A DNA stretch of 64,000 nucleotides from Trichosphaerium sp. ATCC 40318 (GCA_038496445.1 JALMLS010000356.1:85973-149972), one strand, 5' to 3'. Counted from the stretch's first letter, positions 857-64,000 are shown. A program made the numbers and translations. Notes: generated from the letters alone by a model not told the origin.

Positions 857-3306
857 ATGAGTGAGCGGAGGTTGTCAAGGCGTGTGGATTCATCCTCAAT
901 AGCAGCTGTAAAGAAAAACAGGCGCCGTAGCGTTATGTTTCGTACAAGCGGTAGAACGTTTAGAGAAAGAGACCAAGAGCAATCTAGAAAGCTAGTCGAA
1001 GATCAACGCAAGTTTGAAGACCAGTTGCGCAAAGATGAAAAAGAATACGCAAAGATACGTGAAGGCTGGAATAAAGCCGATAGAGAGCGTAAACGTAAAG
1101 AGAACGACGAAAAACGCCGAGAAGAGAGTTTTAAAAAACAACTCCTTAAAAAGAAGGAACAAGCTGAAAAAGAAGCTAGAGCGCTTTATGAAGCTCATAA
1201 GAGGAAGAATAAAATAAAAACAGAGCGGTACGACTATTGTACTTTAATATTGTTTTGTTGTTGCTGAAAACGACCTCTTTTGTACTCATTTCGGCATAGG
1301 TACAAAGCCGAAATAGAACGAGAGATTAATAGTCTCAAACGTCGCAAGCTAGAGATCGATATTCGCAAAAACGAGCGTATAAAGCGCTGGAAGCTCAAAA
1401 CCAACGATAAAAACGAAAGGTAAACAAACATACTTAAACGGTCACTAACAACCCATTAAAGACATGAACAACTCCAACAAACATGGGTTGAGCGACTATC
1501 TGAGCGTATGAAGGAAAGACAGGAGTACAGACGTATTCAGCTTCGAGAGAGCGTGGAAGCACGAACAGAGTACGATCTCGATCACCATCTTGATTCTAGT
1601 GGTTAATATAGACTTTAGACGTAACTCTGTGATGCTTTACAGCTACCATAATACGTGGGACGAACGACGTATTAAGGCAAAGCAAGAATGGAATGCTAAG
1701 CATCCTTGGCAACCACCTAAGAAACTTGTTGTCAAAAAGATTGCGTTTGTACCCAAAAAAAGTAAGTTTTAATTTCTTCTGTTTTCTTGAGCTTGGCCTT
1801 CGAATAAGTGGTTCTAAGCATGTACAATAGGGGTTAAGAAACCAAAGAAGAAGGATGAAGGTGATTTGGATGACCTTGGGCTATCTGATTCGGAAGATGA
1901 CAGCGATGATGAAGTTGGTGATTTGAGGTTAGGATATTGCGTTCGCCTGATTTCTAATACTTTGTTAGCGATTTAAAGAACGATTTGGACGCTGAGGATG
2001 ATTTCTTCTCATCACGTGAAGATGAGGAAGTAAAACCTGTAAATGGGTCTGAAAGTGCAGGTATAGATGATGCACAATCAGAAGATAGCGTTGATAGCAA
2101 CGCTGATAAAGAAGATATTGACAAAAAACAAAAGGATGAAACTGAGAATCCTGAAGATAAAACAGATACTGTTAGCCCTGAAGAAGATTCTTTTGCTGAT
2201 GTCGATGGGTTAAGTGATGAAGAAGGTCTTGACGGATTAGATAGTCCACGTAGTGGAAAAGAAGATATTAAAATCGGTTCGAAGCCCGAAACAGATGAGC
2301 ACAAAGCAAGTGATGAAGAAGATTCGTTTAACGATGCTGACAGAAAAAGTACCGGCGGCATCAAGTTAGATGAACATGAAGATATCATAGCAGGTGATAT
2401 ACACCTTGATATTGATTTCTGTGGAGGAGATGATAGTTCTGAAGATTTAAGCGATGATGAAGACTTAGATGGCTTAAAAGAGAAAGTAAATCATTCAGGA
2501 AATGAAGTCGATATTGACTTCTCTGATGATGATACAGCATCAAATAATAGTGTCACAGCAGGTGATATTCATCTAGATTTTGATAATGTGGATGATGATA
2601 TTGAATTGAGTGATGAGGATGAGTTTGATGATGAAAAACTTGAGAAAGACTTAGACGGTTTAAGTGATTTTGGTGATGATTCTGCTGGAGATACTAAAGT
2701 ACAAGATGACGATAAATATGATAGTTTAAGTGATGAAGATGTAAAGCTAGGCGATAAAGATGATGAAGACTCGTTTAATGATGTAGATGGTTTAGATAGC
2801 TTAAGTGACGATGACGTAAAGTTAAGTGATGAAGATGTTAAGTTAAGCGATGCAGATGAAGAGGACTCGTTTAATGATGTGGGCGGTTTGAGTGATGAAG
2901 ATGTAAAGTTAAGTGACGAAGATGAAGAAGACTCTTTTAATGACGTAGATGGTTTGAGTGATGACGATTTGAGTAAGTGCTTCTTTTTTCAATTTTCCAA
3001 TTTTTTCTTCTTTGCAATTTGCGTTGTACACGTGTTTTGTTGCTAGAGTAAGTTTACTTTTTTTTGTTTTGCTTACTTTATGTTTAGAATTATCAGATGA
3101 CGATGTTTTGAGTACAGAGGTACGTATTGTTTTTAGTAGAAATTGCTTCAAAAAATGTTATTTCGTGATAGTACTTTTACCAGCTTTGGTTTGTTGTTGT
3201 ACCTTTTCTTAACTCTTTAACCACCTATTAGGATGAACCTAAAAAGAACGGCGATGATGTAATGGATGAAGATAATTTTGATGACCTAGATGATGACGAG
3301 TGGTAG
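857..3306 (+). CDS. Coiled-coil plus very long Asp/Glu-rich protein ending in DDLDDDEW
   Basis: ORFs 857-1267 and 1985-3046 are joined by GT-AG introns. The last exon, 3232-3306, reads DEPKKNGDDVMDEDNFDDLDDDEW*. Confidence 0.75.
2722..2972 (+). repeat. Coding acidic tandem repeats (LSDEDVKL / EDSFNDVDGL units)
   Basis: Recurring ttaagtgatgaagatgtaaag and gaagactcgtttaatga units in the acidic exon. Confidence 0.75.
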
Positions 3307-3513
3307 TAGAAACAAAAGTTTTTGATCACTAAGTCAGTGTTGACTTTGTATTGTAATTTGTAGTAAACGTTTATTACTCAACTATGTAGCTTTTTCCTTT
3401 CCTTTAAACACCAAAAAGGCGCCAAAACGCTCTATTTTCTTCGAAATACAACGGGACTCCCGTCACAAGTCAGCTGTAGTCTTAAACAGCGCAAATCGCC
3501 TTCATCTGTCTTA

Positions 3514-3802
3514 GGACTGCACTTTTTCTTTTATTATTTTTCACGCGGATTTTTGCATTTTTTTACCGCAGTTTGACTTTTTGATTACAAATGCCAATTG
3601 GTCACTTTTTCGCAGAAATATAGTACTTGAAAAAAATACCCCTTCCAAACACCCTCATATTTCAATATGAAGGTGGTGAATGCAATACAAAACAGCCGTT
3701 CATTAGGTGTCACAAGCTCGTGATATTTCGTAGAAATTTGCAAAACATGCGGTAAAAAATTGTCAAAATCCGCGTGAAAAATAAAAGAAAAAGTGCAAGT
3801 CC
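3514..3802. mobile_element. MITE, Tourist/PIF-Harbinger-like (289 bp)
   Basis: Imperfect terminal inverted repeats of about 60 bp (GGACTGCACTTTTTCTTTTATT... / ...AATAAAAGAAAAAGTGCAAGTCC), flanked by TTA at 3511-3513 and 3803-3805, with a non-coding interior. Confidence 0.8.
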
Positions 3803-3936
3803 TTAGTTATCAGCTACAAGGTTGATTTCTTACTGCTATTGAGCTATTCTGTTAAAAACTGTACAAAAAGCTCAGATAGGCTCTATCAGGAAAAGACTGA
3901 CTTGAAGCATTACTTGGAGAAGTCTCCACGCTAAAA

Positions 3937-5619: not shown

Positions 5620-5724
5620 GAATGATCTTAAAGAACAAACAACAACGAACATGCCTTAAGTAGTAGACAGTTTACATCGACTAAGCAACTTCCGTTTGTT
5701 CACTAAGTACATAAAGAAGTTGCG

Positions 5725-7983: not shown

Positions 7984-9371
7984 CACCAATAAAGCAAGTC
8001 CCATTAAGTTTAAAGTGTTCAAGTTAACTCAACCAGCTTCATGCACATACTGCCATTGGTACAACTAACGTAAGGAGCAATCAAACTCTCAAAGAACTAA
8101 TCGAAATCACCTATGGCATTGCAGCGAAAGCACTACTGAGCACTACTGTCTGATTGTTTGTAGCTAATACTATGACAAGGAGCAATAGGAAAGTCTGTGT
8201 ATCTGATCGTGACAGCTAAGGAAGACGAGGTTCTATTGTCACCTTGTGGCTGATACTAGAGTAATGGTATGAGGATTAACAGTATCATTAAACATCCTTT
8301 CAGGACAACATTTCATTACTTTAAAAGGTGGGTGTAATGTTCCAGACCTGCTGCCGGATCACGTACGTCACTGCTTAGTTTTTTTTCTCTACCTTTTTTG
8401 GTTTTCTTCTTTCTGTTCTAATTCTAACTTCATTTAGTCGTGTTGATCACTGCTACTTCGCTTTTATTAGTGACATACAAAATCAAACAACTCCCAATAA
8501 AACTGATTTACAGCCCTATATCGTGTCTAATTAAAACAAAACAAATGTTGCAGTGTTTGTTCCATAAACTAACACAACCGGAATCGTGGTGCTCTCCATT
8601 ACATGCTACTCAAACTCCGAGTTTTGAGAGGCCCCCGTGTGCCTCTTGGCTACTTTGGGTATGTGTTCCTGTGTATTCAGGCTGTCTACCATATCATTGC
8701 TCTGTAATGCCTAAACTAGGTTTTCTTTTTTGACGTTTTTGTTTAGGGAAAAAACTGATTTGTTAGCCATCTTAGGTTTGGCCATAGATACATGTTCTCG
8801 CTAGGGCACGGAGCACGTAGGAAAGACACCAGACATCACACTCAGCGGGAGATTTTTTTGTACGTGAGAAAGCATGTCGAGAAATGATGCTGTTTGGTAA
8901 TGTGTTATTGTTGTGTTAAACTAAGGAGCAAGGAAAGACGGGTCGTAAGCGTCGCTTTGTTTAAGGTTTGTGGAGAGTTAGGATGTAATTTTCTCCATGC
9001 ACCTTGAATGCCCAAATTTAATTAGTTGTAACAGCTCTTTGTAATTTATCACGTGGACGTACTAATTAAGCGACTTGGTACCTTTATCTCTACCAATCAC
9101 GTAAAAACACGTAAGCAGAACGAAAATGTAAGTTGATAGTGGAGAGCAACGTCCGAGAGTCCATAGTTGTGGCAAAAGTCACCAAAAAAATGCGGCTTCG
9201 TTGAAAGCGAACAAAGTTTCCAAATACCGCTTCTCAATTTATTTTTTACACGGCGTTTCAACAAACATCCACGCGCACTCGTTAGCCTAATTTAGTAGTT
9301 GACCGAAGCGTTGACTTATTGGACAAGCGGATTTTTTGTAAACAAGCAGTAACATCTAAGAACCAACAGAA

Positions 9372-10926
9372 ATGGGCCTTTTCTTTGGTAAGAAGAAAAA
9401 GAAAAAGGGAAAGAGTGATGGTTTGGTTAAAGACAAGGATGCTGATGATACAAAAGCGGGCGATTATGACTACTTCTTCAGGTTAATACTTCTTGGGAAC
9501 TCCGGTGGTGGTAAGAGCTCTATATTAAGGCGTTTTACAGATGAAATATTCGAAGACAATTATTCAACTGTTGGAGTTGATTTCGTACGTTGTCTATTTT
9601 TCTTCTTCTCTTCTTTGCGCTTTTGGTAGCTTTCCGATGTTTTTGAAGGTTGGCCCACTTGTCTCCGTACTTTTCATTATAACGTGTATCATGTTTTTAG
9701 TCACGTGGGGCGTAGTACTAATGCTCAAAAAAGCAATCTATTTTAAAATGAAAAAAGTGAAATAATTATTAAAAATTTGGAAAATGGCTTTGTTCCACCT
9801 TTTCTCATCACGTGATGCCCTACATGTTTTTACGACATCAATTTTTAATATTGCCGCCTTCTTGAAAAAACCAAAACACCTTTTTTGCGCGTGAACCCGC
9901 CTAACAAGACAGCGTTTTAAAATACAAATATGTATACTTCAAAGCTAATAATTTGTCCGTAGAAGCAAAAAATCGTTAAAAGCAATGATACGCCTATAAA
10001 ACTACAAATATGGGTATGTCTATAAAGCCTTTTATCTAGTCTATTTAATATTACGCCTAAACAACGTCGGGTTTTTATGCAAAAGCAAGAAAATAGAATT
10101 TTTTATTGTATTATTATTTTTTTTGTATTAGTTTTGAATCTACTCTTCGTTCCCGAATCCACGTGGTCTTTACTAATGATCACGTGATTTTTGAGGAAAA
10201 AAAAACATTGTTTTTTCTCTTTGTCTTAAATTATTAATTCTGTTGGTTCGTTGACACGTGAAAGGACACAGCAGGCCAGGAAAAATTCCGAACAATCACA
10301 AATTCGTACTACAACAAAGCTGAAGGCGTAGTTTTGGTATTCGATGTTTGCAGTCAAGAAAGTTTTGATGGGCTTGGTGAATGGCTCGTTGAAGTAGAAA
10401 AATACGCTGCTGCTGATATACCTATTCTTTTACTTGGTAATAAGAACGACAAAGAAGGGCGCGTGATAACAGAGTCAGTAGCGCAGGTACAATCGTAAAT
10501 CTATCTTTTCAAAGAATTTTTACAAAAACTTACGCTTCAGATCGTTCAATATAACTCCTTTCTACTTTCTCTACTCCAAACAAATACCAGTGAGACCTCC
10601 TAATTATTAGAAAATATTTTTCGGGTTGAGGAGTCGGTGAAAGTGAACAAACGAAAGTTTGAATGATTTTTCTCAGTTAAAATCAAGAAAAGTCGTAAAC
10701 CATACCTTTTTTCTTTTCATCTCTAGTACCTATCTCATCACGCTTTAGGAATGGGCAAGCGAAAAGGGCTTAGAATACTTTGACGTATCCGCAAAGGAAA
10801 ACGTTAACAGTACGTCCAGTACTGCATAAACTAAAAAAAAAACTAACATGATTTTTAAAAATAGTCACAGACGCTTTCCAAGCTTTAAGCGCAACACTGG
10901 TAGAGAGCAAACAATCAGCAATATGA
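9372..10926 (+). CDS. Rab1/Rab8-like GTPase with N-terminal MG+polyK and no C-terminal cysteines
   Basis: [50 protein letters not shown] and DVSAK; ends ...LVESKQSAI*. Confidence 0.9.
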
Positions 10927-11293: not shown

Positions 11294-12775
11294 ATGGCAG
11301 ATAATACAAGTGACATTAGTCTCCTGGACTTTCCTGCAGAGGTACAAACTGAAAACAGCGTTTAAGGTGTTTTAAACAATATTGTAGCTATTGGTTCATA
11401 TTATCGCGTTTTTGGATAATAAAAGGGATATATACGTGTGTATGATGGTTAACAAGGAGTTAAACAGATGTAGCAGTGATAATATGGTACAACAGAGTTA
11501 AATACGCTCTCTAAACGGTAGTTAAAAGGTATGGGCCATGCAACTCAAGTCTTTGATTGGTAAAGTACCTGACAACGCTCACAACAACAGAATACGTTAC
11601 CGCGACATTATTCGACATTCAACAACATCAAAGGTGCGGGTTGTCTTCAAAAACGACAACATTCACTTTCCACCTTTGATACCACTCTTATTTTCAAAAT
11701 TGTCACTTTCATCAGCCTGTCTACGTCCGTTCAAGTTGATGTTTTATCCACGTGTTAAATACAATTTAAGTCTTTTGACAACACGTGTCAACTAAAATGC
11801 CAGTATGTTGCACGTAAATTTTTTGTTCACTCTTTGCTTCAAAAAAAGTATTTTTTCATGCTCGCAGTAGCCATGTTTTGAATAAAATATCGTACATTGA
11901 GGTACCTAGAATCGAATGAAGGAACTTTATCAATAACGTTCTTCGAAAAGATAAAGATTGAGTAGAAGTATTTCAATTCGTCATCAATTGCGTTTAGCTA
12001 ATTTATTTTACTCTCTTAGGCTCTTTTTGCAAAGGGAAAGTATGATCTATCGAAGAGCGATATTCATTGTGATTACAACATTGAAGATCATATTATTGGG
12101 TATTGTTACAGAGGAGAGTTAGAAAAACTGTCAAAAAATGCTGATAAAATTGAAGTTAACAAAGTATCTCTTTACCGATCTTATGTATATTATGGCAACT
12201 TCTCATACCCATTCATGGTAAAGAGATAATCGTAAAGCAACGTCATCACACTGACATATTATTACCAGGGCAAGATTATTATCAAAGACGGTATGACAAC
12301 AAAAGCCAAATCAAAACCAGTTTGTTCAGCTCAAGTTTTCTTGAATAGGTTTGTACGTTCCACACATTGTAGAAAAAAATGGACGCGAAAGAAATACACC
12401 AGCACTAGTTCTCGCTAATACAGAAGCGGCAGGTTAGTGAATATATTTTATGTTCTAAACTAGAGAAAGGAAACAATTTAATTTTGATGTCTATTTTAGG
12501 AACTCCTTTGCATTGGGCTTGTATTTGTGGTCACGAAAAAGTTGTTAGATATTTATTAGATACCTTTTCAGATGAAATAGATGTTGACATAAAGATAAAA
12601 AAACACAATGCTACTGCTCTAAAAGGTATCCAAAAAATCATGTGTTCAACGAGTTCGTACAACTGTACCTGTTGAATAATGTGTTGTAGTTGCTCAATCA
12701 AATGGTCATCTAGAAATAGCAAGATTACTGAGACAATTCAAAAGAATGAAACGTAGGAAAAACCGCCGTGACTAA
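11294..12775 (+). CDS. F-box plus ankyrin-repeat protein
   Basis: LLDFPAE.LVHIIAFL...MVNKEL (F-box), followed by TPLHWACICGHEKVVRYLL and TALK.AQSNGHLEIARLL. Confidence 0.8.
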
Positions 12776-20012: not shown

Positions 20013-21142
20013 ATGCCTTCTCTATTCAACCTACAATTTAAAACTGAAGGCGTACCATCAACTGAAGTAGTACAGATAAGCATTACAGTCAATGGTACGT
20101 AGCGATTGGGTAAATACCCAAGTTAAGGGTAAAAAACAAAAAATCCGTTCCAATCAACTTTCTAAACTTTTAACAAAACACGTGATCCAAACGACGTCAA
20201 AATTTTTTTTCGCTTCCGTGCAGTTTTTTTTTTTTGGTTTGTGAAAACTTTTGTTGTCTTTCTTTACTCTTCATGTCTAATGTTTTACTAGATGTCAAGT
20301 ACGTTGCTGTACAAGATGATAAGGTTAAAAATAAACACAAAGTACGACAAGTCCTATGGCCAAGGAAAACACTCGCTTTGGTTAGAATACAATCACTGGT
20401 ACGTACACATGCCGACTAGCGTCGCAAGTTATTCTGAAGTAAAATAGTTTTTTGTTTCTGAAATTTTTTTTGTTGATAAAAAATTGATCACGTGATCTCT
20501 TATAACGAACAGACACTTCGTTTAGCGTCATCTAAAGACATTACAATTTTCAGATATTCTTCGCCGATTGTACAAACGAAATTTACTCAACTGAGACAAG
20601 TCGCGAAAACACAGCGACTTCCTCTTGTTTGGTAGATTGAAATTTCGTACTCACGTGTTTCGGTTTTTTTCCTTTGTTTTTTTTTCGAACACAAACGCTC
20701 TTGATACAGTTTTCAATTGAAATTTGAACGACTGGTTCTACCCCTTAAATATACACCTACCTATAGCGCTATAGATTTTTATTTCTTTTTGGTTTTTAAC
20801 CCACCACGTTGTGCGTTGAACTTACTTTTTTTCTTTTAGAATGATGCACGTTTTTACACAACATACTCTATCGTCCTACCAGATAAATTGAATGGTCTCT
20901 TTACTAAGCATTCACAACCTATAAAAGTACCTGGAACAGAGAGATTTGGTAGCTGTACTGTATACATGAAGTGGAGGAAGATCCGATCACGAACAAGGTC
21001 CAGCACAGTCTAAAAAAAAAAAAACTTAAAAAACCGCCATCCGATGACAAAAAATAACTTTTGGTTTAGTAAGAAGAAGCAAGCTAAGAAAGCAGCGCAT
21101 AGACTTCGTACATCTAATCTTGGCAAGTATATTGGAGGTTAA
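20013..21142 (+). CDS. Hypothetical multi-exon protein
   Basis: Exon chain from MPSLFNLQFKTEG to ...KKAAHRLRTSNLGKYIGG* with canonical introns; no family recognised. Confidence 0.55.
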
Positions 21143-21951: not shown

Positions 21952-23860
21952 TCATTCGGATCTTGCTAAGTGACTTGCCTTGGTAGGGTTTGGATTGACT
22001 TTGGCTACAAGTTTTAGTTTACCAGTAACAGGTGTCTTCCAGTCATTTTCTAGGAGACCACCAGTATCGCCAGAATCAGGGTTGAGACACCAAAAAAAGT
22101 TGTCTGTGTTTTCGGTTTCCACTAACCACGTAGTGTATGCATCAAGCCATTGCTTCAAAACAATTAAATAAACAAGTATGTCAAAAGAACGTACTCCATC
22201 TGATCCAGTTAGTTGACCACCCCATTCTCCAATGACAATAGCGTTGCCTAAGGAACGTCAACAAAGCACGTGCAAAAAATCTTTCGTTTTACATACCTGT
22301 AACATTCGGCACAAAACCATAGTGAGTGTCCCATATCTCTGGCATATTTGCTGGGAAATTAGGGGCAGCGAAGTATGATTGATAAGCTACAGAAGGACCA
22401 TAGCAATGAGGAGAGTATACAAGTTTATCTTTTTGAGTTAACTCTACAGGTGCTTCATGAACGCCGAGAAGATTTTCTCCCCTAAAAAACTATTTTTAGA
22501 TCGCTCGCAACACACTGAATATTGTCGTACCAGAAACATGCGTTAGTACATGGTGGACTCTTGTTTGTTCCTTCGACAAAGATGAGGTACCTGCATACTA
22601 AAGTAAGCAAATAAAGAGCTTTGAGAAAAAAAGTGTTGGTAGAAAAAAATCGTACTTTGATCCAGCTGGAGTTGAATGGATATGGTTACCAATTCGTGCT
22701 GCAGCTTTATCCCAGTCAGTCTTTAGATCTCCTGTATTCCATGTAGTTGCGAAAGGTTCATTCTTTAGATCAAGGGCAACAACATTCCAGGTGTTAGCGT
22801 ATCGTGCGATAAGAGTATCCTTTGTAAAAAATTAGATCCATGTTTCCAACAAAACCTAAGTTTCTCGCTTACCCAGCCTTTGATGACCATGGATTCTGGA
22901 TGAGTTGCGTCATACCATAAACCGTCTTGCATAAACGTGCCTAAGATATAGTGCGTTACAAATGGTAGTCATGGTAAGGAAATGAAGTACGGAAAAACAA
23001 GTTAATCTTACCTCCTAAGAAGGAATGGAGATCTAACATTATGAGAATACCGTTCTGTCCTGCGTAATCTATAATTTTATCTAGTACTTGCATTGAAGTC
23101 AAACTAGTCATTTCAAGTAAGTAAAAGAATGAGACTTGTCGTAAAAGGGAACAGACACCAAAAAAAAAATCTCAAGAAACAAGATTGTTACGAAATCTTG
23201 GCGTACTTTTTGAGGTCTTCGTTCATGTTGTAATAGTTTATAGAATCAGGCATAGTGGTATTATTGAGTACCAATTCTAGGAGAGGAAGAAAATTAGAGT
23301 AGGATTGATCGAGGCTTTTCGTGGATGGTTTCTTTTGTTTTGTTTTGTCTTTCAATCTTATTTTTTTATTGTACCTAAGTAAAAAGGAAGTCTCATGGCG
23401 TTGAACCCATTCGTCTTTATAAAGTCCAATAATGTTTTATAGTCTGAATTTATTTAGTATACTAGTTACTGGAGCAGTAAAAAAAAAATATGAAAATGTC
23501 ACGTGACAGTACAAAAAGCAAGTAAAAGTCGGAAGAAAATTGTTAGGATAGTTTCTTCCTTTTTGTGATGTTAAAACTGTTTAAATATTGGCCTACCTTG
23601 TGCCCATAACCCATGACAGACATTATTAGTCGTTTCAAAACCGAACCAACTCAATCCTTTTAGATAAAATCGTTCGCCGTTCGCGTGCAGGTGACCGCCA
23701 GAAGACGTTAATTCAAACGCCTCTGGGGCACTACAACCAGCCCAGGCATAGATCTAAAGGGTTTTTGTTAATACACAACAGCACTGTGGATAGAGGACGA
23801 TAATCTAAATAAGCCTACCGTGAAGGAAGATAAGACTATAAGAAATAGACACCAGTTCAT
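21952..23860 (-). CDS. GH5 endoglucanase (cellulase), secreted
   Basis: Signal peptide; KGLSWFGFET, HGLW, GFNAMRLPF, DLKNEP, YSPHCYGP, IGEWGG and WCLNPDSGDTGGLL. Confidence 0.93.
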
Positions 23861-25340: not shown

Positions 25341-28306
25341 ATGGCTACTAAACCAGATGGAGTACGTTTATTTTCATCGTTTTGTACTGACAATAACTAG
25401 AAAGACTGAAGAAGAGCGCCTGTCATTTGCTACATATGTTTGCGCACGTCTGGGTATATCTAAGTGTTCTCCAGTAGAAGGTCCGCGTTTCTTTTTCGAA
25501 AGTTAGTAGTTTGACACTTCGTCGCTCGTCTGATGGCAACTTTAAGCCGTTACAAAAGCGGTCCGCTATTAATCAGTCAAAATGATGCTATAACGTTATA
25601 AAATTCTCTAAACAGCTTTGATAGGTTCCAAAGGCTCAGCGGACTCACAGTGCTTAATATCTAGCTTGCACGAACGAATGACGGCAACAAGCAACAACTT
25701 TGTTATACACAATTTAGATCGCACTGAGCAGCATTTAAAATCACTTTGGGAAGATATTCGCTCCAAAGCAGACAACGAAAAACAACAAAACACGAGTACT
25801 TGTTCTTTGAAGGACTTTGTTAGTGATATGTTTGATCTTTTAACTCAACTGTTTGACGAGTATTTCAATCAAAGTACGTCTACTTAGGATCACGTGTTTC
25901 GTGTTCAAATGATGACTTACTTTTTTTTTAGGTTGGGAAAATATTGAAGGACTTGTGGATGCAAACAAAGCGGTGAGGGAATTGTAAGTATTTTTTAATA
26001 CAAAGACAACAAGATGCTGACACCAAATTTAGAGCTAATCTCAATACTAAAGAGGCTGAGCACAAGCAAAAGTCTATAGATAAAAAGTAAGCAAAATGCA
26101 GTCCTGCTGGTAGTGGCATTAAAATCACGTGATTTTATAAAAAAAGTCTCGTGTAATTTTTTTTCTAACATTCAAAAAAGGCAAGTACCAACTGCAGAGA
26201 TAAATGAAATGATACAGAATGCCCAAGACAAAGACGATGATGATGATTCAAAGGTCAAACATATAGTCACAAGTGAAGACTTTAAAATCGTTGATAAAGG
26301 CAGAACATTGTTGTTAATTCATGCTTCTTACTGCGAAGCTTGTAAACGATTAATACCAAATTTTAAAGCAGCAGCGAAGGTATATAAACAATTGTTAACC
26401 TATGAGTTATCGTATTCTTATAACTATACAGTTAATCGCAGATATGCCAGAGATTAAAGTCAGATTCGCCATGCTAGAAGGTTTGTTTTTGTACAACTTG
26501 AAAAACGCTGTTTTTTCTGTTTTTTCTGTTTGTAAGTTTTCTGTTATAGGTAGTCTGCCAATGACTCGAAATTGGGCTCTACCAGCACTACATTATGAAG
26601 AGTATCCTACATTATGGATGTACAAGTACGTAATTATAAGTGATGTCAAAGACATGACTAAAACAAAAAAACCAGGGATGGTAAATTGGAAGATAAGTTT
26701 TCAGGAACTGATCGTTCTATTGAAGCCATCGTTAATTTTGCAAAGCGGTATGTATCAAATTAAAAGACCTGTTTAATTACTATATAACTAACTATTACAT
26801 AAGGAAATCACGTGATAGAGAAAAAGCTAAACGACATTGGGAGATTTTACGGCAAAAACTTGTCGTTGATAAATATGCAAAAAGATCTGATGATGTTTTA
26901 AAGACACAGAAGCAACTCACTAAAGTCTTCGAGATTAGCAAGGTATGTCTCCAAAACCAATTAACCTTGTTTGTTTTAATACCTTGAGTGTTAATTTAAT
27001 CCACTTTCTGTAGGCTTTAGGTTGTACTAAACAAAACAAGTGTGTAGTCTCTCCAAAAAGAGATTTGACTGTACAGAAACCAAGATTGTATTTAATGGGT
27101 GGTGGCATGGCTTCAGGTAAAAGCTCTGTTGTCCGTAAACTACATAAAACGGACGAATTCTGGATGAAGTATGGTAAAGATATCGTAATAGTAGAGGCAG
27201 ATAGATTTAAAATGAAAGATCCTGTGTTTAAGGTATGTATGCACTATTTCAGAACATTGGACACTTGTTAGATGTGAGATCTAAAACAAATTAGGAGCTT
27301 GAAACAATAAAAGATCCTCTAGCTAGCTATCACGTTCATGAATACTCAACACAAGCAGCAGTAAGTACATGGAGTGCACTCAATATTTATTTTTTTGTAT
27401 TCTGACTTATCTGTTTCATAGTCAGAGCTGTTCTTGGTTTCTTTACACCATAATAGAGATATTGTACTTGATGGAACTATGATGTGGGAACCATTTGTGA
27501 AACAAACAATAGAAATGGTTCGTGATAATAAGAACAACTATTGTAGAGGTCCTGGATATAAAAAAGGAGGTAACCATCTTACGTCAAAAAGTCAATGAGT
27601 TACGAAATGAAATATTAACTTAACTGACAGAGGAAGAAGTGTATTGGAAAGTGGAGCGACCTGCAGAGAATCCATGCCTAGAGTATGAAATTATTATTAT
27701 CGGTGTTACAGCACCTGCAGAGACTGCTGTAGCAAGGTATGAAGTGCTTTGAAGAAAGCGTTTTCATTAACAAAAACAACTTAGAGGTATTGTGAGGAAA
27801 ATTGTTACAACAAGAGGAGTTCCTGTTTATTCGCAGTTGGAGAGTCACAGACAGTTTTCAGTGAATTTTGAAGGTTATGTAAAATCGGTTGACCAAGGTA
27901 TGCTTGTTGACACATGTCACAAATCAAGGATAACTGCGCTTTTTTTTTCTCCAATTTTGAGTATAAGAACATTGTTTTCTTTGTTTAGACAGTCATATCT
28001 TATTGATTCATTCTAGCAATGTTATTTTATAATGGAGAGAAAGATCCAATACTCATTGCCCATAAAGAAGGAAAAGGTAAAGAACTTGAAGTGCTAGATA
28101 AGAAGAGATACAAACACTTCATCAGGTAAAAAAATAGATTGTTTTTGTTGTTTGTTTCTAACACGTGTTTTCTTACCTACAGTAAAAAAGATATAAATTC
28201 AAAAGCAAAGAGTGCTGCTGAGTTGTTTCCTCAAAAAGACCTTGAATCAAATATTAAAGCGTGTTGTCCAAATCTATTAAAAAAAGTAAAAGCATACTTT
28301 AAATAA
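25341..28306 (+). CDS. Zeta-toxin-like P-loop kinase of the plant CaM-dependent NAD kinase (NADKc) type, with an internal thioredoxin-like domain; copy A
   Basis: LMGGGMASGKS, VEADRFK, VHEYST, RDIVLDGT..WEPFV.QTI.M, RGPGY and SQLESH; the insert contains HASYCEACKRLIPNF and YPT. Confidence 0.85.
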
Positions 28307-41675: not shown

Positions 41676-42387
41676 ATGAGAGGCATAAAATCAGTAATTG
41701 TTGGAGATGGCGCTGTTGGAAAAACGTGTATGCTTATATCTTATACCACTAATACGATACCTGGTGACTATATACCAACAGTACGTTAGCGGAGCTCACT
41801 ATTCTTGTAGTAAAGATTTATTTTGCTAATGTTTCTTCGCAGGTCTTTGATAATTACTCTGCAAATGTGATGGTTGATGGCCATCAATCAATCTCGGATT
41901 ATGGGATACTGCCGGCCAAGGAGACTATGACAGATTAAGACCTTTATCGTACCCTGCAACGGATGTATTCTTAATATGTTTCTCAGTTGTTGCTCCATCA
42001 TCTTTTGAAAACGTGAGAGAAAAGGCACGTGTGAAACTTCGGTTTTATCCTTTTCTCTTGTTTGTTGCTTACGTCTTCGTCTAGTGGTTTCCAGAAGTTT
42101 CTCATCATTGTACTAGCTCTCCAATCATATTAGTTGGTAATAAGATTGATCTCAGAGATAAAGAAACAACGATAAATAAGCTTGCTGCAAAGAAACAAGC
42201 TCCAATAACATTCGAACAAGGAACATCAATGGCACAAAGTATTGGTGCTTTGAAATACCTTGAGTGTTCGTCTTTCACACAGGTCGGACTTAAAAATGTT
42301 TTCGATGAAGCCATGCGTGCTGTTATATCTCCACCTACAAACAAGAAGAAAACAAAGAAACATGAACAGAAATGTAGACTCTTGTAG
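41676..42387 (+). CDS. rac: Rac/Rho GTPase copy A (apparent 1-bp frameshift near 41886)
   Basis: [42 protein letters not shown] and a CRLL CAAX box. The frame breaks at ggc cat ca atc aat. Confidence 0.85.
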
Positions 42388-46400: not shown

Positions 46401-47424
46401 AAATTAAAATAGAATGTAGTACGAAAGTCCCAAGGAAGCCATTTGTGAAACGAATAATTGTACTGAAGCATAAGTATAATTGACTTTGAATATTCACTGT
46501 AAGAAATCGTTAACTTGAAGCTTCAACGACTTACGCCCTTAAGGATGATAACCCTACAAGCTACATACCTAAGAAATTCTTCACCACCTTGAAAATCAAG
46601 TATATCATTTGTTGTAACACTGTACCAATCATCCAAAGTTTTTAGAGGCAACTCTTCTGCAACCTAGTTTTTTTCAACAAAAAATTTTTGTCACGTGAAA
46701 CGCACGTGTTCTAGGAAGTCTCTTTGTGCTTTCTTATCACACCATGTAGTAGGACAAGGTACTCCTTAAATAATAATAAGCTCTAGATTGCATGTATTTC
46801 CAGAAAAAAAACCAATAGTTCAACATGAGAACAAACTTTGGAATTCTGGTTCTGGTCAGCGTACTGAATTTCCATGGAAGCCATTTTTTTGTTGTTAGTG
46901 TAGAATTTAATATATTACATACTGAGTAATCGTATTGGCTAATAACATTAAGTACAAATTCAGTTAAGCGGTAATAAAAATTATTCAAAAAAATCATGTC
47001 ATTTGAAACATACCTAACGAGTTCTCTGCCTCCTAAATACCCAAAATCACGAATACGTACTCCATACCAATCTTCAGGCTTTTTAATATCGAATTTAATA
47101 GCAGCCTAGACTCGTTTAAGCGAAAAGGAAGAAAATTCAAGCGTGTCAAATGATTTTAACAGCTTTACTGTCAAACTATGTTTAAACAGTTACTAGACGC
47201 GCATTCACTGGTTTTTAAACATATTCTAAGGCTTTATAGCAAGTTTTAACGGAAATGCCAACTTTTAAACTAAAATGACGTATTACCTCGTCCAAAAATC
47301 GTTTTCTGTTCTCTAGTTTATCCCAGTAGTTCGGTTGAGCTTGTAATATTGTTTCATACTTTATTTTAAGTTTAAGCCCTTGACGGGGGACTCCTTTGGA
47401 TACTAGCGCATGAGTCACGCTCAT
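43450..47424 (-). CDS. Seven ~70-aa Trp-rich repeats plus a C-terminal PD-(D/E)XK (Vsr/DUF559/EDxHD-like) nuclease domain
   Basis: Repeats follow P.xFW...N...F...DWYxV....I...GG..L...YP...W.PWKF. The C-terminal domain reads LDVFIPSLNLGLEYQGEQHY...RDIEKLILC..GITIVAVPYWW. Confidence 0.85.
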
Positions 47425-47514
47425 AGGTGCGCCCACACTACGCTCATAACATACTGCACTATTGCGACTTAGTCTCGCTTCTTCTCGGCTTAATGTGAGC
47501 GATAACAAGCACAG

Positions 47515-48853
47515 ATGCCAGCGCAAGGCGCCCCTGACGTTCTTGTCATTCCAACCGCTCGTAAAGACGCTTTTAAAACTGGTCGTTGGACAGTATTTGT
47601 CGTTTTAATCGCCGTGGTTATCGTTATTATTTTACAGCTAAATAAACCAAAGAATACATGTGGTAATGGCGTTTTGGATGATTCTGAAGAATGTGATAAC
47701 GGAACTGGTTGTACACTTTGTAAATGTGATGATGGTTACATGCCTGCCTCTACACTTGGATGTAAACCCAGTACGAGCTTTAAAATAAGGATTTATTTCG
47801 TTTGAGGCAAAGAAAGTTTTCAAGTCTTATTTTGTACCTTCGGTCTCAGTTCCTGCCTTTAGAGTGCGGTAATGGCGTCCTAGATGATAGAGAAGAATGC
47901 GATGGTACTCTTTACTGTACACCTTCGTGTCAGTGTAAACAAGGAACAATCAGTAATGGCAGTGGAAGCTGTGGTACTTTTTTTTGGAGTTTTTCATTTT
48001 ACCACGTGTTTTCCAAAAAAATGCGTCACTACTTTTTTTCTTGACGATGGCGAGTGATTTTTTATTGCGTTTTAGGTAAACACTTTAATGTCATTATGGA
48101 TTTATATGAGGGACCTTTTCCAGAACTGTTTCTTGTAAAGGAAGAACACATTAGAGATTTTTTACAACGAAATGGTGTCTTTGTAACAATAGTCAAACGT
48201 GATGACATTAAGAACTCACAACAGTGTACAGCACCTCTACTATATGTAGTAAGTATATCAACACCCAGAGTAGAAACATACCTTGATGAGAAACTGTGTA
48301 AGGGTACGTGATAAAACACAAACTCTGACAAACTATTTGCTAATTTTCTGGGTTTAGAAACAGCTTGTCAAGGACAAGTCACGATTATGCCTTTAGTACC
48401 TGAAGTCCATGAACATGTAACATTCCCTCAATATTCTGAAAAATGTAATGCAAAACTTATTCCAGTTATAACAAATGGTACAACAATCAAAGCCGATCAA
48501 ACATTACAAATACTCAGTTTATAAATGGTAAAAAAATATCTCAAAAGAAAATTGTAGTAAAAAATAAATGTTAAGCGCCAACAAATAGACATAGCATGAT
48601 GGACCTTACTTGAATTGATAAACAATCTGCTGAAAGTGAACCTCCAGTGCATAAAAAACCAACCAAGCCGAAAAATAGAATTTGTTTTGGAAGTGACATG
48701 TGTGTTTTTTACCAATTTAAAACGTTTTCGAAGTCACATATCTCCTCGATCTTTGCTCATAAAGTTCCAGGTGTAGAAGGTAGCGACCTTTATAGGATGT
48801 GTATCAAATCACTTAAGTGGAAGACCTATCACAACAGCATACACCGCTTGTAA
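47515..48853 (+). CDS. Type II membrane protein with CGNG..D..EECD cysteine-rich repeats
   Basis: TM segment WTVFVVLIAVVIVIIL, then two CGNGVLDD.EECD repeats (Myxococcus Cys-rich/DUF4215-like). Confidence 0.75.
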
Positions 48854-51222: not shown

Positions 51223-51897
51223 TGGCAAGAGTGTCAACGTCACAAGAAAAACTACTTAAGTCGACATAAGGTGAAAATCCGCTTTCTGCTCTAAGCAACA
51301 ATCCCACTTCTCATGGCGAGAAATCTCATAAAATTCTCTTGGGTTCACTTGCTTTGTTTCTTCAGGTGACTGAGCAAAAAGACATGTAAGGTTTTAGTCA
51401 CGTGTTGGGAGTTGCACCAGTAGCCTAAGTCATTGTGCTTGTAAACTCATAAACTTGCTAAGTTGAATAAACCTTCACGTGTCTTGACTTATAGCGGCAC
51501 GTATAAAGGCTAGCGGATACTTGCTGAAAGCAACTCTAACATGTGTAGTCACTAATTAAATAGTATTATAATACTTTTCCTAACCCTTGGTCTCATAAAT
51601 AAGTACAAAAAATGTAAGTCGTTTCATTAAAGTCAGCAACTGCAACTTCCACAATACCCTATATACCTGCTTACGTGCGCAGTACGACCAAAATAGTAGC
51701 AAGTGAGACTAACAACTGAAGAATTCAAACGTACTTATTGCACGTGCCGTTCCTTACAAGATTTTACACTTTTTGAAGTTACCTTGGTGCGCTTCTTTTG
51801 GCGATAATAGCGTCCGGAATAAAGCTTGACTATGTTAAGCGTGTTAACCATTCGTTGAAACTAGAAGATGCTTGCACAAAGTTAAAATACATCGCAA

Positions 51898-54992: not shown

Positions 54993-55155
54993 AGAGCTAT
55001 TGGAACTGACAATAAAAAAACAAAGAAAAAGATGTATGAACTCGATAACGTGGTTAAATTTCTTTTATGAACTTAATATCTCAATAGAAATGCATTACAC
55101 ATGTGTACTGACCATGCACGTGCATGAAAAAACAACCATCGTTGGGGTTTTTTAG

Positions 55156-60923: not shown

Positions 60924-61610
60924 CTACAAGAGTCTACATTTCTGTTCATGTTTCTTTGTTCTCTTGTTCATTGGCGCAGATATAACAGCACGTGTGGCTT
61001 CATCGAAAATAGTTTTAAGTCCGACCTGTGTGAAAGACGAACACTCCAGGTATTTCAAAGCACCAATACTTTGTGCCATTGATGTTCCTTGTTCAAATGT
61101 TATTGGAGCTTGTTTCTTTGCAGCAAGCTTATTTATCGTTGTTTCTTTATCTCTGAGATCAATCTTATTACCAACTAATATGATTGGTACATTAGGACAA
61201 TGATGAGAAACTTCTGGAAACCACTAGATGAAGACGTAAGCAACAAACAAGCGAAAAAGATAAAACCGAAGTTTCACACGTGCCTTTTCTCTCACGCTTT
61301 CGAAAGACGATGGAGCAACAACTGAGAAACATATTAAGAACGCCTCTGTATCAGGATATGATAAAGGTCTTAATCTAGCATATTGTTCGCGCCCAGAAGA
61401 ATCCCATAATTGGAGATTGATTTGAAGACCGTCAACCATAACATTTGCAGTGTAATTATCAAACATGAAATCTAACATCTCTACAACAACAGTTACTAAC
61501 TAGTAAATGAGTATAGGGTCACCAGGCATGGTATTAGTGGTATAGGATATAAGCATAGCCGTTTTTCCAACAGCACTGTCTCCAACGAGTACTGATTTTA
61601 TTGTTCTCAT
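60924..61610 (-). CDS. rac: Rac/Rho GTPase copy B, divergent (G12S- and Q61R-equivalent), possibly a pseudogene
   Basis: [26 protein letters not shown] and CRLL. The switch-I/intron-1 region is altered. Confidence 0.75.
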
Positions 61611-61726
61611 TGTTGTTGTGTGTATTCCTTGCATTAAAAATACTTGTTTGTGCTGTAGTTAGGCTAACATAAAATAATTTGGCTTTCGCCTAATTTGAAT
61701 TATTTATCTTCACTGAAACTAAACAG

Positions 61727-61884
61727 CTGCTGTTAAGGCTTGGTGGAACAATGGTAAAATACAAAGGCATTGTAATTACATCAACGACAAGCTAGAAGGA
61801 GAGTACAAGGTATGGTATGAGAATATCCAATTGTGGTGGAAGTGTAATTTTGCCAATGACAAACAAGAAGGAGAATACAAGGCC
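61727..61884 (+). pseudogene. Orphan MORN-variant repeat fragment
   Basis: AVKAWWNNGKIQRHCNYINDKLEGEYKVWYENIQLWWKCNFANDKQEGEYKA with no full gene around it. Confidence 0.65.
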
Positions 61885-62136
61885 TTGCATTGGGAATGGG
61901 TACCCATTGTAATTACATCAATGGCAAACGATCATATCAGGCATTTTTGGCTAGGTTTTGTTCATCACTGTGAGTACGTAGTACATGCTAACAAGCAAAA
62001 ACTGTTTAGCTATGTTCTAAGGTAACATAGACTAAGAAAAGCGTCTTACCATTGAACAAGTTTTATTGAAAAATACCGACAATTACTTTTCTACCACTTT
62101 CTTTGTTGGCTTTTTTTTTTTGTATTTTTTATAAGT

Positions 62137-64000
62137 TTACATAGGTACAAGCCCTAGTTGTTGCTGCTTTGTATAAACCAAACTAACATTACATAAAGTA
62201 CGTTTTTCCCAATAGCTATTCATTGTTTCAATATCTCCAGTGTCAAAGCAATATTGTAATACAACCAAGAAAGAATCAATGTTTATAACTTCTGGATTAT
62301 TTTCAAGTCCATCATCAAAGAACTTGAATAATTGTTTCTTTGTACCAGATGTTGCTATTAGTTTAATCATAATCTCATATGAACGTTGATCAATACCAAA
62401 ATTCTGTTGTATTGTCTTATATAGTTCAAGTCCTTTCTGTAAGTCACCAATCTTTAAGAAACCTTCAAGTAAAATATTTATCTGACTTGTATTTACTTTT
62501 ACTTTCATTATCTCACTCATTGTTTCTAAAAGTTCTGTAGCTGCTGGTATATCTTCACAAATACATGATATAGCTGTGTTTATATGAGGATCCTTATCAG
62601 AAAAAACAGAAGTAAGCATAACACACAAAACGTTACACAAAAAAAAGAATCAGAAAAGAAAAAAAAAAAAAAAAAGAAAAACTAAAAGCGTGTTCAAGCT
62701 CTTTTATGTTTTCAGGCAATAACTTGGCATCATTGTTTCCTCATGCGTAGTGATTACAGTGATGCAATTAAGAACACTTTCATCCGTCACGGGTTTTTTT
62801 TGTTGCTTGAGTTTGAAAAAGAATACGAAGACGTAGGTTTGGGTTTATACCTTGTCATCATCATTATCACCATAAATCGTGTCATTTATGAAGTTAATCA
62901 AAGATAATTTATACTCTTTTCTCTTTTCTTCTGATATAACAGACTCAAATATAGCTTTCCATAGAAATGCATAGGTTGCAAGTGTCTCGTCTAAATAGAG
63001 AAATGAGCCAAGAGCTTGAACCTAAAAAAAAACTGTCCCGAAAAAAATAGGCAAACACGGCCTTTGTTGTTATTATTATTTTGGAGTATGTAATAAAGTG
63101 TAATTACACTGGCAGTAGAAAGTGAATTAAAAGAAAATTGTGTGATTCTTGAGTCACCACGTGAAGAAAAAAACAAAAAAAACTAGATAAGTGCGTTTGG
63201 AGACTTCTTCTATTTTACCCTCCGCGCTGGCCAGAGAATAGTAGTTTGTAGTAAAATACGTAAAGTGTAGCAGATATAAATTGTAATAGATTATGCAAAC
63301 GTACGTTCAAGTGATTCAGCAAGGGCACGTTCAAACTCTTCCAAAGGCAATTCCATCAAAATAATAGAAAGAAGGTATGGACGTACAAAGTACTCTTTAC
63401 ACTCTATCATTTTACTCCTTATGGCCATAATATGTTGTAATAGATCATTAACACGTGGTACATCCTTTGATATTGTTAATGCTTTAAGGAACCCTTCAGC
63501 TATTATCGTAAAGTGCATATACACAGCACGTTTATGAAGTGCATGCCATAGTTCTGAAGCGCTCTTAATATCACCATTATATAAATAATTCTTTAAAAGA
63601 CAAGAAAACATTAAATGGGGTATCTCATTATCACGCTATGGAAAGGGTGTTAGAAAGACTGTAAGAAAAAACAGTTTGAAGAGGTTTTTTTTTTTTGTTT
63701 TGTAACACGTACAAGGTCTTTAGCTTGTAGACAAAGTTGGTAGAGTAAATATCCAGCTTCTCTATCACAAATAGATAGAGACAATGCCATTTGTTTGTAT
63801 AAAGCGGTTGCAACGTTGTGTAACGGTACATTACGTAGAGGTTCACAGAACTATGACTTAGTTAAAAAAACTGGCTTAATAGACTTAAAGAAAAGAAAGA
63901 AAAAAAACAGACAGACGTCTTGCTGAAGCTTCCAGGCAACCTTGATCAGAAAGAGGTTGTTATTTTTATACGACGTACTTTTACTATTTTTTCAACTTCC
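62137..64000 (-). CDS. Pentatricopeptide-repeat (PPR)-like protein, 5' part outside the window
   Basis: INILLEGFLKIGDLQKGLELYKTI, SYEIMIKLIATSG and FSCLLKNYLYNGDIKSASELW. Confidence 0.75.

What the first reader, a model, noticed from the sequence alone, without database searches (positions are those of the whole stretch)
2013..63457. CACGTG palindrome about tenfold enriched and concentrated in introns
Seen: I counted 64 CACGTG by hand, about 36 intronic, 15 intergenic/UTR, 10 exonic and 3 spanning exon-donor junctions. Random sequence at about 33-35% GC (my estimate) would give roughly 5-6. Many extend to longer palindromes (CATCACGTGATG ~9806, GATCACGTGATC ~20486, TAAAATCACGTGATTTTA 26120, GTCACGTGAC ~53378, CATGCACGTGCATG ~55113) and sit next to poly(dA:dT) tracts. 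The Rab gene has five in two long introns, while the short ankyrin-PARP introns have none. The equivalent intron of the two NADKc paralogues (26126 and 36536) is otherwise unalignable but keeps AATCACGTGATT; another site (28162) is lost in copy B. Established: (T)CACGTG(A) is bound by bHLH-ZIP factors (Cbf1, USF, Max, TFEB), and Cbf1 acts as a nucleosome-organising factor in yeasts. Inference: this may be a genome-wide intron-embedded chromatin, regulatory or methylation code in this lineage.
Basis: partly seen in the sequence, partly recalled or inferred. Interest (0 to 1): 0.82.

Follow-up and report, generated by a model that had tools for sequence, protein, structure and literature searches.

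The report
Dense CACGTG motif in noncoding DNA
An unidentified, intron-rich microbial eukaryote carries the palindrome CACGTG about once per kilobase of noncoding DNA, seven to nine times more often than chance. It is most likely the docking site of an abundant paired DNA-binding protein that organises chromatin or transcription, but that function is untested.

Summary
The window holds 65 CACGTG, against 9.5 +/- 3.1 in dinucleotide-preserving shuffles. CACGTG is the top-ranked hexamer at Markov orders 1 to 4. No other palindromic hexamer exceeds 2.3-fold, and single-mismatch variants sit near 1-fold. All flanks are unique, so this is not a repeat family.

The enrichment lies in noncoding DNA (about 1.3-1.75 per kb) and not in coding DNA (0.41 per kb). 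Density in intron-like DNA is not significantly higher than between genes, so "concentrated in introns" is only partly right.

The recognition unit is a dyad of about 8 bp: TCACGTGA occurs 18 times against 0.8 expected. Flanks are symmetric relative to transcription direction, which points to double-stranded DNA read by a dimer and not to an RNA signal. Poly(dA:dT) runs are 2-2.7-fold enriched within 40 bp of the sites. Noncoding CpG is not depleted (o/e 0.91), so nothing supports a methylation code.

My best reading is a bHLH-ZIP-like (Cbf1/USF/TFE-type) factor site used at very high density, possibly as a nucleosome-organising element. No relative of this genome could be found, so genome-wide extent, conservation and occupancy are untested.

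The parts
2013..63457 (.). Span holding all 65 CACGTG copies. Start coordinates are listed in the full report. Mean spacing is 960 bp, with an even spread (variance/mean 0.63 in 2-kb bins).
9050..9055 (.). Copy about 320 bp upstream of the Rab start codon (9373), followed by near-copies CACGTA.
9702..9814 (.). Two copies (9702, 9809) in Rab intron 1 (about 9585-9963). The copy at 9809 is part of a 12-bp palindrome.
10160..10260 (.). Three copies (10160, 10181, 10255) in Rab intron 2 (about 10015-10266), beside an A9 run. The last lies 6 nt before the acceptor.
11749..11787 (.). Pair of copies 33 bp apart in the presumed first intron of the ankyrin-repeat gene.
20489..20494 (.). Copy inside a 12-bp palindrome, next to T8 and A6 runs.
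22267..22272. Copy inside a 49-nt intron of the minus-strand gene read by eye as a GH5-like glycosidase (no Pfam hit for that ORF). It shows that short introns are not exempt.
25891..25896 (.). Copy in a short intron of about 58 nt of NADKc-like copy A. It is identical in copy B (36773), within a block that is nearly identical overall.
26120..26137 (.). 18-bp perfect palindrome centred on CACGTG in an intron of copy A. The 12-bp core is shared with copy B at 36536 although the surrounding intron is diverged.
36536..36541 (.). Counterpart in copy B of the 26126 site.
28162..28167 (.). Copy present in paralogue A only; B has an indel here. The copy at 26809 is likewise A-only, with two substitutions in B. 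Both show turnover since the duplication.
42026..42031 (+). Copy overlapping a GC-AG donor (AAG|GCACGT) of Rac paralogue 1. The same junction is kept in paralogue 2 at 61277 (minus strand).
46692..46708 (.). Two copies 11 bp apart beside T7/A6/T5 runs, inside the minus-strand gene 43450-47604.
48003..48008 (.). Copy flanked by T8 on one side and A7 on the other, in an intron-like gap of the plus-strand gene 47515-48524.
51399..51746 (.). Three copies (51399, 51476, 51741) upstream of the second Rab-like gene (exons from about 52033). A fourth, at 52322, lies in its first intron.
55113..55126 (.). 14-bp palindrome centred on CACGTG, between the purple acid phosphatase gene and the F-box gene.

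Best explanation
CACGTG, in its preferred form TCACGTGA, is the double-stranded DNA binding site of an abundant homodimeric sequence-specific protein. This is most plausibly a bHLH-ZIP factor of the Cbf1/USF/TFE type. Selection keeps about one site per kilobase of noncoding DNA in this genome, in introns as well as between genes. Together with the poly(dA:dT) runs that cluster within about 40 bp, the sites most likely create or fix nucleosome-free, accessible spots. These would be general regulatory or intragenic enhancer elements, as Cbf1 sites plus poly(dA:dT) are in many yeasts. Shown here: the enrichment, its sharpness, its dyad symmetry, its restriction to noncoding DNA and its association with poly(dA:dT). 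Inferred: the class of protein, the binding itself and the effect on chromatin.
For: (1) The excess is 7- to 9-fold and survives every background: 65 copies against 9.46 +/- 3.08 in shuffles, and top hexamer at the Markov orders ranked. (2) All flanks are unique and there is no repeat family, so the copies were not seeded by one mobile sequence. An excess of this size with unique flanks needs selection site by site. (3) Only the complete palindrome is enriched. Half-site variants and all nine single-mismatch classes are at 0.6-1.9-fold, and other E-boxes and ACGT palindromes are at about 1-fold. That is the signature of a dimer reading both halves. (4) The flank preference is T at -4 and A at +4: TCACGTGA occurs 18 times against 0.8 expected. 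From established knowledge, this is the flank preferred by Cbf1, USF and TFE/MITF and disfavoured by Myc/Max and Pho4. (5) Flanks are symmetric with respect to the direction of transcription for the 44 sites inside gene spans, so the signal is read on DNA and not on the transcript. (6) Coding DNA has 0.41 sites per kb, noncoding 1.15-1.75 per kb. After removing junction and misclassified cases, coding is close to expectation. (7) A5/T5 runs are 2-2.7-fold enriched at 1-40 bp on each side and back to background at 41-60 bp. Within +/-40 bp, AAAAA occurs 157 times against 70 expected relative to noncoding background. 68% of sites have a run within 40 bp, against 43% of random positions. [quoted passage not shown] (9) 73 unrelated eukaryote-like contigs (339 kb) show 64 observed against 74 expected, so the excess is a property of this genome.
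Against: No binding protein was identified, and nothing bHLH-like was recognised among the ORFs scanned, though one would not necessarily be expected in 64 kb. The sites are not concentrated where yeast general regulatory factor sites lie. Only 2 fall in the 4.5 kb immediately upstream of start codons, and several genes (both MORN genes, the discoidin-domain gene, the SOUL gene) have none upstream. Paralogue comparison gives no excess conservation: 2 of 4 aligned sites are kept, the same as any hexamer in those alignments (36-56%). Symmetric +/-4 pairs are commoner (32 of 65) than independent half-site preferences predict (about 21). A single dimer does not predict this; it may mean several factors with different flank tastes. 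The gene map used for compartments is my own rough one.
Confidence: 0.5

Rival explanations
1. The same kind of protein-binding site, but acting as ordinary gene-specific enhancers of a large regulon (a Myc/Max-, USF- or TFE-like growth or metabolic programme) located largely in introns, with no general role in organising chromatin.
For: Copies are unevenly shared among genes. The small GTPase genes are rich (Rab 6, second Rab 4, Ras-like 2), while the MORN and discoidin-domain genes have none in or upstream. The region just upstream of start codons is poor. Gains and losses have occurred between young paralogues.
Against: One site per kb spread evenly over 64 kb (variance/mean 0.63-0.81), with roughly 29 genes by my own rough map, is far denser than a regulon normally needs. 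The tight coupling to poly(dA:dT) is typical of nucleosome-excluding modules.
Confidence: 0.2
2. A DNA-level mark with a role other than transcription. CACGTG would be the target of a sequence-specific DNA-modifying or DNA-processing enzyme (methyltransferase, nuclease, recombination or replication factor), and its density would serve self-marking, origin or hotspot specification.
For: The specificity is enzyme-like: the exact hexamer is 7-fold enriched and every neighbour about 1-fold. It is a palindrome with a central CpG. Spacing is even at about 1 per kb. Palindromic symmetry at +/-4 exceeds independent half-site preference.
Against: There is no CpG decay in noncoding DNA (o/e 0.91) and no excess of CATGTG/CACATG (0.79). 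Known restriction-like systems deplete their palindromes rather than enrich them (established knowledge). No such enzyme gene was seen in the window.
Confidence: 0.13
3. An RNA-level intronic element: CACGUG in pre-mRNA bound by a splicing factor, or pairs of copies base-pairing to fold long introns.
For: The highest density is in noncoding DNA inside gene spans (1.75 per kb), especially the first two thirds of genes (2.1 per kb). Long introns hold 2-3 copies. Windows around sites fold better than their shuffles (mean z -0.82, 23% below -2, against 3% for controls). ACTAAT branch-like words occur near sites (10 against 2.9).
Against: RNA signals have no reason to be palindromic or to have dyad-symmetric flanks, and the flanks show no asymmetry relative to transcription. 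Regions between genes are still about 7-fold enriched. Many introns hold a single copy, which cannot pair with another copy within the same intron. The extra folding is largely explained by A-run/T-run pairing and by second copies in the window.
Confidence: 0.07
4. Remnants or footprints of a small mobile element or dispersed repeat that carries CACGTG.
For: A few sites sit in longer imperfect inverted repeats built from A and T runs (48003, 20489, 26126).
Against: No sequence is shared beyond +/-5 bp among the 65 sites. A self-comparison of the window finds only the gene duplications. Palindromy beyond +/-4 is not significant (permutation p 0.22). Close pairs (3 within 35 bp) match the Poisson expectation of about 2.7, my own estimate from the spacings.
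Confidence: 0.03
5. A compositional artefact: ACGT is common because of GTACGT splice donors, or the excess is chance.
For: ACGT is the commonest CpG context in noncoding DNA (207 of 1051), and GTACGT is a frequent donor (62 on both strands).
Against: The excess persists at Markov orders 3 and 4, whose expectations are themselves inflated by the motif. None of 100 shuffles reached even 18 copies. Only a handful of sites overlap donors (42026, 53268, 61277).
Confidence: 0.01

Closest known systems
Cbf1 sites (CDEI-type RTCACRTG) as general regulatory factor sites in budding yeasts, acting with poly(dA:dT)
   Same: Same core and same T/A flank preference. The sites are likewise associated with poly(dA:dT). 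[quoted passage not shown]
   Different: In yeasts the sites lie in promoter nucleosome-free regions, and by my recollection and arithmetic (not computed here) the hexamer is not grossly over-represented genome-wide. Here the density is about 1 per kb, most copies lie in introns, and the 250 bp before start codons are relatively poor. No Cbf1 homologue or occupancy was shown.
USF and TFE/MITF (CLEAR element GTCACGTGAC) and Myc/Max E-boxes of animals and their unicellular relatives
   Same: A homodimeric or heterodimeric bHLH-ZIP protein reads the CACGTG palindrome. T at -4 is favoured by USF and TFE/MITF. Intronic and intragenic sites are common.
   Different: These define regulons of hundreds to thousands of genes and do not produce a 7-9-fold genome-wide excess. 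Myc/Max disfavours the T flank seen here.
Plant G-box (CACGTG) bound by bZIP GBFs and bHLH PIF/MYC factors
   Same: Same hexamer with an ACGT core, and abundant in regulatory DNA.
   Different: bZIP G-box factors also use hybrid ACGT elements and prefer a CCACGTGG context. Here CACGTA, CACGTC, TACGTA and GACGTC are not enriched, and CCACGTGG occurs only twice. The window's Rac-type GTPases and yeast-like intron signals do not suggest a plant (my own reading).
PATC (periodic A/T clusters) in C. elegans introns
   Same: A noncoding, intron-embedded DNA signal proposed to set chromatin state. A/T runs accompany the motif here, and AAA/TTT shows a weak 9-10 bp periodicity in noncoding DNA.
   Different: PATC is a periodic composition signal without a specific palindromic word, and its resemblance here is only by analogy.
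Over-represented short genomic words of bacteria (DNA uptake sequences, Chi)
   Same: An exact short word at about 1 per kb with unique flanks, maintained genome-wide.
   Different: Those are bacterial, 8-12 nt, mostly non-palindromic and tied to uptake or recombination. No such process is known for a eukaryote, and coding DNA is not enriched here.

Membership tests
bHLH-ZIP (Cbf1/USF/TFE-type) binding sites | Exact palindromic CACGTG core, with both half-sites required | tested here: met
   65 copies against about 9.5 expected. Half-site and single-mismatch variants are at 0.6-1.9-fold.
bHLH-ZIP (Cbf1/USF/TFE-type) binding sites | T at -4 and A at +4 flank preference | tested here: met
   A at +4 (folded halves) in 45% of cases and T at +5 in 51%. 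TCACGTGA occurs 18 times against 0.8 expected.
bHLH-ZIP (Cbf1/USF/TFE-type) binding sites | A bHLH-ZIP protein encoded by the genome that binds the motif | not testable with these tools
   Only 64 kb of the genome is available. No bHLH-like ORF was recognised by eye among ORFs of 75 aa or more, and none among the 30 ORFs scanned against Pfam. No relative genome was found.
General regulatory / nucleosome-displacing factor sites | Sites lie in promoter nucleosome-free regions just upstream of genes | tested here: inconclusive
   2 sites in 4.5 kb of the 250 bp upstream of start codons, 1.58 per kb at 251-500 bp, and 2.1 per kb in 5' and middle intron-like DNA. The gene starts are my own rough calls, and transcription start sites are unknown.
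General regulatory / nucleosome-displacing factor sites | Association with intrinsic nucleosome-excluding poly(dA:dT) | tested here: met
   A5/T5 runs are 2-2.7-fold enriched within 40 bp and at background beyond.
General regulatory / nucleosome-displacing factor sites | Nucleosome depletion or phasing at sites in vivo | not testable with these tools
   Needs MNase or ATAC data.
Plant-type G-box / bZIP ACGT elements | Hybrid ACGT elements and the CCACGTGG context also used | tested here: not met
   CACGTA/TACGTG 1.1-fold, CACGTC/GACGTG 0.61-fold, GACGTC 0.43-fold, CCACGTGG 2 copies.
Dispersed repeat / MITE / transposon footprint | Shared flanking sequence, terminal repeats or target-site duplications | tested here: not met
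   Flanks are unique. Self-BLAST finds only gene duplications. Palindromy beyond +/-4 is not significant.
CpG methylation target | Mutational footprint of 5mC: CpG depletion with TpG/CpA excess, and decay products of the motif | tested here: not met
   Noncoding CpG o/e is 0.91. CATGTG/CACATG is at 0.79-fold.
Intronic RNA splicing element | Strand-specific context relative to transcription, and restriction to transcribed DNA | tested here: not met
   Flanks are symmetric relative to gene orientation. DNA between gene spans still has 1.15 sites per kb.

The most novel reading that the evidence does not exclude
CACGTG could be a lineage-specific genome-wide DNA signal, about one per kb and mainly in transcribed noncoding DNA. 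A dimeric protein would read it for a purpose other than classical promoter control: for example intragenic chromatin phasing that licenses or protects genes, self-marking by modification, or specification of replication or recombination sites. This would be a eukaryotic counterpart of the over-represented functional words of bacterial genomes.
Probability: 0.15. Interest if true: 0.8.

Novelty: new variant of a known kind. Interest (0 to 1): 0.6.

Why it matters
Short transcription-factor words are almost never over-represented several-fold across a whole eukaryotic genome. If the density seen here holds genome-wide, this organism has tens of thousands of selected CACGTG sites, most of them inside genes. 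That would make it a natural system for asking how a single sequence-specific factor, together with poly(dA:dT), shapes chromatin across gene bodies. It would also allow a test of whether the Cbf1-type general regulatory role proposed as ancestral in yeasts is much older and can be used far more heavily. The organism belongs to a lineage with no close relative in very large protein collections, so the observation also flags an unsampled genome with unusual regulatory architecture.

Tried and rejected
**Organism identification failed.**
- Three word-indexed homologue searches found no self or near hit: the MORN ORF, a purple-acid-phosphatase exon and a Rac exon. The best identities were 24-66%.
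- The exhaustive representative search with the phosphatase exon gave at best 46-49% identity. The hits were unnamed metatranscriptome proteins and scattered eukaryotes: a sea anemone, Diphylleia and Chlorokybus.
- A metagenome scan with the Rac exon returned 72 loci but no close relative. The best (L070) is 88% identical over one segment, has 46% GC and holds no CACGTG.
- Contigs fetched for three hits (one had no DNA available) gave no relative either.
- No tRNA or Rfam family is present in the window.

**Gene finding.** I wrote a small codon-usage and splice-signal gene finder. It either over-chained or under-called exons. I therefore used it only as a coding mask, together with hand-drawn gene spans.

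**Paralogue conservation test.** Numbers were too small and the result equals background.

**Hairpin hypothesis.** Windows around sites fold better than shuffles. This is explained by A/T runs and neighbouring copies, and there is no preferred mirror arrangement of the runs.

**Transposon-footprint idea.** Close pairs occur at Poisson rate and there are no shared flanks.

**Literature.** Six completed searches found no report of a genome-wide CACGTG excess.

Full report
**What is there**

The window (64,000 bp, 36.2% GC) contains 65 exact copies of CACGTG. Their start coordinates are: 2013, 3029, 4060, 6030, 6124, 9050, 9702, 9809, 10160, 10181, 10255, 11749, 11782, 13258, 15183, 18920, 19441, 20179, 20489, 20652, 21562, 22267, 23500, 25891, 26126, 26809, 28162, 29822, 30573, 30873, 31255, 32889, 33065, 36536, 36614, 36773, 38200, 38359, 38704, 40033, 42026, 43692, 45413, 45638, 46692, 46703, 48003, 49750, 49881, 51399, 51476, 51741, 52322, 52931, 53268, 53380, 54085, 55117, 56651, 57278, 59913, 60989, 61277, 63158, 63452.

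**Is it more than chance?**

- Expected counts are 7.0 (base composition), 9.3, 10.5, 18.4 and 35 for Markov orders 1 to 4. CACGTG has the largest z-score of all hexamers at orders 1, 3 and 4, even though the high-order expectations are themselves inflated by the motif.
- One hundred dinucleotide-preserving shuffles gave 9.46 +/- 3.08, with a maximum of 17.
- No other palindromic hexamer exceeds 2.24-fold, and the other CG-containing palindromes are at 0 to 2.24-fold.
- The nine classes of single-mismatch neighbours lie between 0.61 and 1.88-fold.
The excess is real and specific.

**Anatomy of the sites**

- The 25 bp on either side of each copy are all different, so this is not a repeat family. 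A self-comparison of the window finds only two gene duplications and internal repeats of the MORN genes.
- There is a flank preference for A at +4 (45% of folded half-sites) and T at +5 (51%). TCACGTGA occurs 18 times against 0.8 expected.
- Symmetric 8-mers make up 32 of the 65 sites, where independent half-site preferences predict about 21. Beyond +/-4, palindromic extension is not significant (permutation p = 0.22).
- For the 44 sites inside gene spans, upstream and downstream flanks are mirror images with respect to the direction of transcription.
- An exact palindrome, dyad-symmetric flanks, no enrichment of half-sites and no orientation relative to transcripts together indicate that double-stranded DNA is being read by a dimeric protein.

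**Where the sites lie**

The organism is an intron-rich eukaryote. Its introns are mostly short, with GTACGT or GTATGT donors and CTAAY branch sites. I could not obtain reliable automatic gene models. I therefore combined a self-trained coding mask with hand-drawn gene spans based on recognisable ORFs and Pfam hits.

| Compartment | Sites | Length | Density |
|---|---|---|---|
| Predicted coding | 11 | 26.8 kb | 0.41 per kb |
| Noncoding inside gene spans | 33 | 18.9 kb | 1.75 per kb |
| Between gene spans | 21 | 18.3 kb | 1.15 per kb |

(All.)

- Several of the 'coding' sites are really splice junctions or intron ends (26809, 53268, 61277), so true coding DNA is close to expectation.
However, intron-like and intergenic DNA are both strongly enriched, and the difference between them is not significant.
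- Short introns are not exempt. Copies lie in introns of about 49, 58, 71 and 91 nt.
- Measured against my approximate start codons, the 250 bp just upstream are poor (2 sites in 4.5 kb). The first and middle thirds of genes carry 2.1 sites per kb of noncoding DNA (p about 0.01, but dependent on the rough map).
- The sites are spread evenly along the window (variance/mean 0.63 in 2-kb bins).

**Companions**

- Poly(dA:dT) is the only word class clearly enriched around the sites. Within +/-40 bp, AAAAA/TTTTT occurs 157 times against 70 expected from noncoding background.
- A5/T5 runs are 2-2.7-fold enriched in each 10-bp bin out to 40 bp and return to background at 41-60 bp, with no preferred orientation.
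- 68% of sites have such a run within 40 bp, against 43% of random positions.
- The windows fold somewhat better than shuffled versions. This stems from A-run/T-run pairing and from neighbouring copies, not from a designed hairpin.

**Methylation**

CpG is not depleted in noncoding DNA (o/e 0.91, against 0.65 in coding DNA). The deamination products CATGTG/CACATG are not in excess. Nothing in the sequence supports a 5mC-based code, although direct modification data would be needed to exclude one.

**Conservation**

- Two young inverted duplications lie in the window. The NADKc-like (zeta-toxin domain) genes span 25266-28310 and 37391-34480 at about 77% identity. The Rac genes span 41667-42405 and 61619-60904 at 84% identity.
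- Of four aligned sites, two are kept (25891/36773 and 42026/61277) and two are private to one copy (26809, 28162). In the same alignments 36-56% of all hexamers are kept, so this test is uninformative.
- The one suggestive case is 26126/36536, where a 12-bp palindrome is shared inside an intron that otherwise aligns poorly.
- The private sites show that copies are gained or lost on the time scale of these duplications.

**Explanation**

An excess of this size with unique flanks cannot be made by composition or by a mobile element. It has to be maintained site by site. The dyad symmetry points to a dimeric DNA-binding protein.

The best-known readers of CACGTG with a T/A flank are bHLH-ZIP factors of the Cbf1, USF and TFE/MITF kind (established knowledge). 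[quoted passage not shown] Cbf1 is inferred to be an ancestral general regulatory factor, and its use trades off with poly(dA:dT) tracts (PMC2897762; see also PMC5880240). The coupling of the motif to poly(dA:dT) found here fits that model.

I therefore rank 'site of an abundant bHLH-ZIP-like dimer that opens or organises chromatin in noncoding DNA, including introns' first (0.5). Second (0.2) is the same protein class acting as ordinary intragenic enhancers of a large regulon. Third (0.13) is a DNA mark for modification, replication or recombination. An RNA-level intronic element comes next (0.07); it conflicts with the palindromy, the flank symmetry and the intergenic enrichment. A mobile-element remnant (0.03) and an artefact (0.01) are last.

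What does not fit the yeast model is the location. Most copies are inside genes and few lie immediately upstream of start codons. The density, about one per kb, is also far above anything described for Cbf1 sites.

**Comparison with the known, and novelty**

The motif itself is the classical E-box/G-box, and the proposed mechanism is known. What is unusual is its use: a 7-9-fold excess, roughly one selected site per kilobase, mostly intragenic. Six completed literature searches found no description of such a genome-wide excess. The library is incomplete and the organism is unknown, so a prior description cannot be excluded. I rate it a new variant of a known kind.

**Limits**

- Only 64 kb of one genome was available.
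- The organism could not be identified, and no relative exists in the collections searched. 'Genome-wide', 'lineage-wide', conservation and occupancy therefore remain untested.
- The compartment figures rest on an approximate gene map.

Noticed in passing
window 41843-42018 (break near 41880-41886): Exon 2 of Rac paralogue 1 changes reading frame. It reads [13 protein letters not shown] in frame 0, then [19 protein letters not shown]... in frame 2. Paralogue 2 is intact in one frame. The conserved GQE is also GQG here. This is a possible pseudogene or an assembly indel.
   Followed up: partly
window 25266-28310 vs 37391-34480; 41667-43052 vs 61619-60295: There are two inverted segmental duplications. 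One is the thioredoxin plus zeta-toxin-domain (NADKc-like) genes, at about 77% identity including most introns. The other is the Rac genes at 84%, followed by a 325-bp flank at 97.8%, which suggests recent gene conversion.
   Followed up: partly
window 42025-42031 and 61277-61283: A GC-AG intron with donor GCACGT (the usual donor here is GTACGT) is kept in both Rac paralogues.
   Followed up: no
window 3937-5619 (+) and 57860-58717 (-): Two MORN_2-repeat proteins have F-box-like N-termini. Their best database relatives are bacterial or metagenomic, at only 24-33% identity over most of the length. F-box-like N-termini also precede a Ras-like gene (30974) and the gene at 54127-54584.
   Followed up: no
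window 43450-47604 (-): A multi-exon gene carries at least four repeats of a module of the form ...DWY...LGG.... A C-terminal ORF (43878-44339) looks by eye like a PD-(D/E)XK-type nuclease motif. No Pfam family matched either piece.
   Followed up: no
whole window: No protein of the window has a close relative among 5.8 billion clustered proteins or 1.84 billion representatives: best 46-49% for a phosphatase exon and 66% for a Rac exon. The genome appears to come from an unsampled eukaryotic lineage with yeast-like strong splice signals (GTACGT/GTATGT donors, CTAAY branch).
   Followed up: partly
whole window: CpG o/e is 0.65 in predicted coding DNA but 0.91 in noncoding DNA. ACGT is by far the commonest CpG context in noncoding DNA (207 of 1051).
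   Followed up: no
noncoding DNA of the window: AAA/TTT words show a weak 9-10 bp periodicity in their autocorrelation, with bumps at lags 9-13, 18-21 and 30-31.
   Followed up: no
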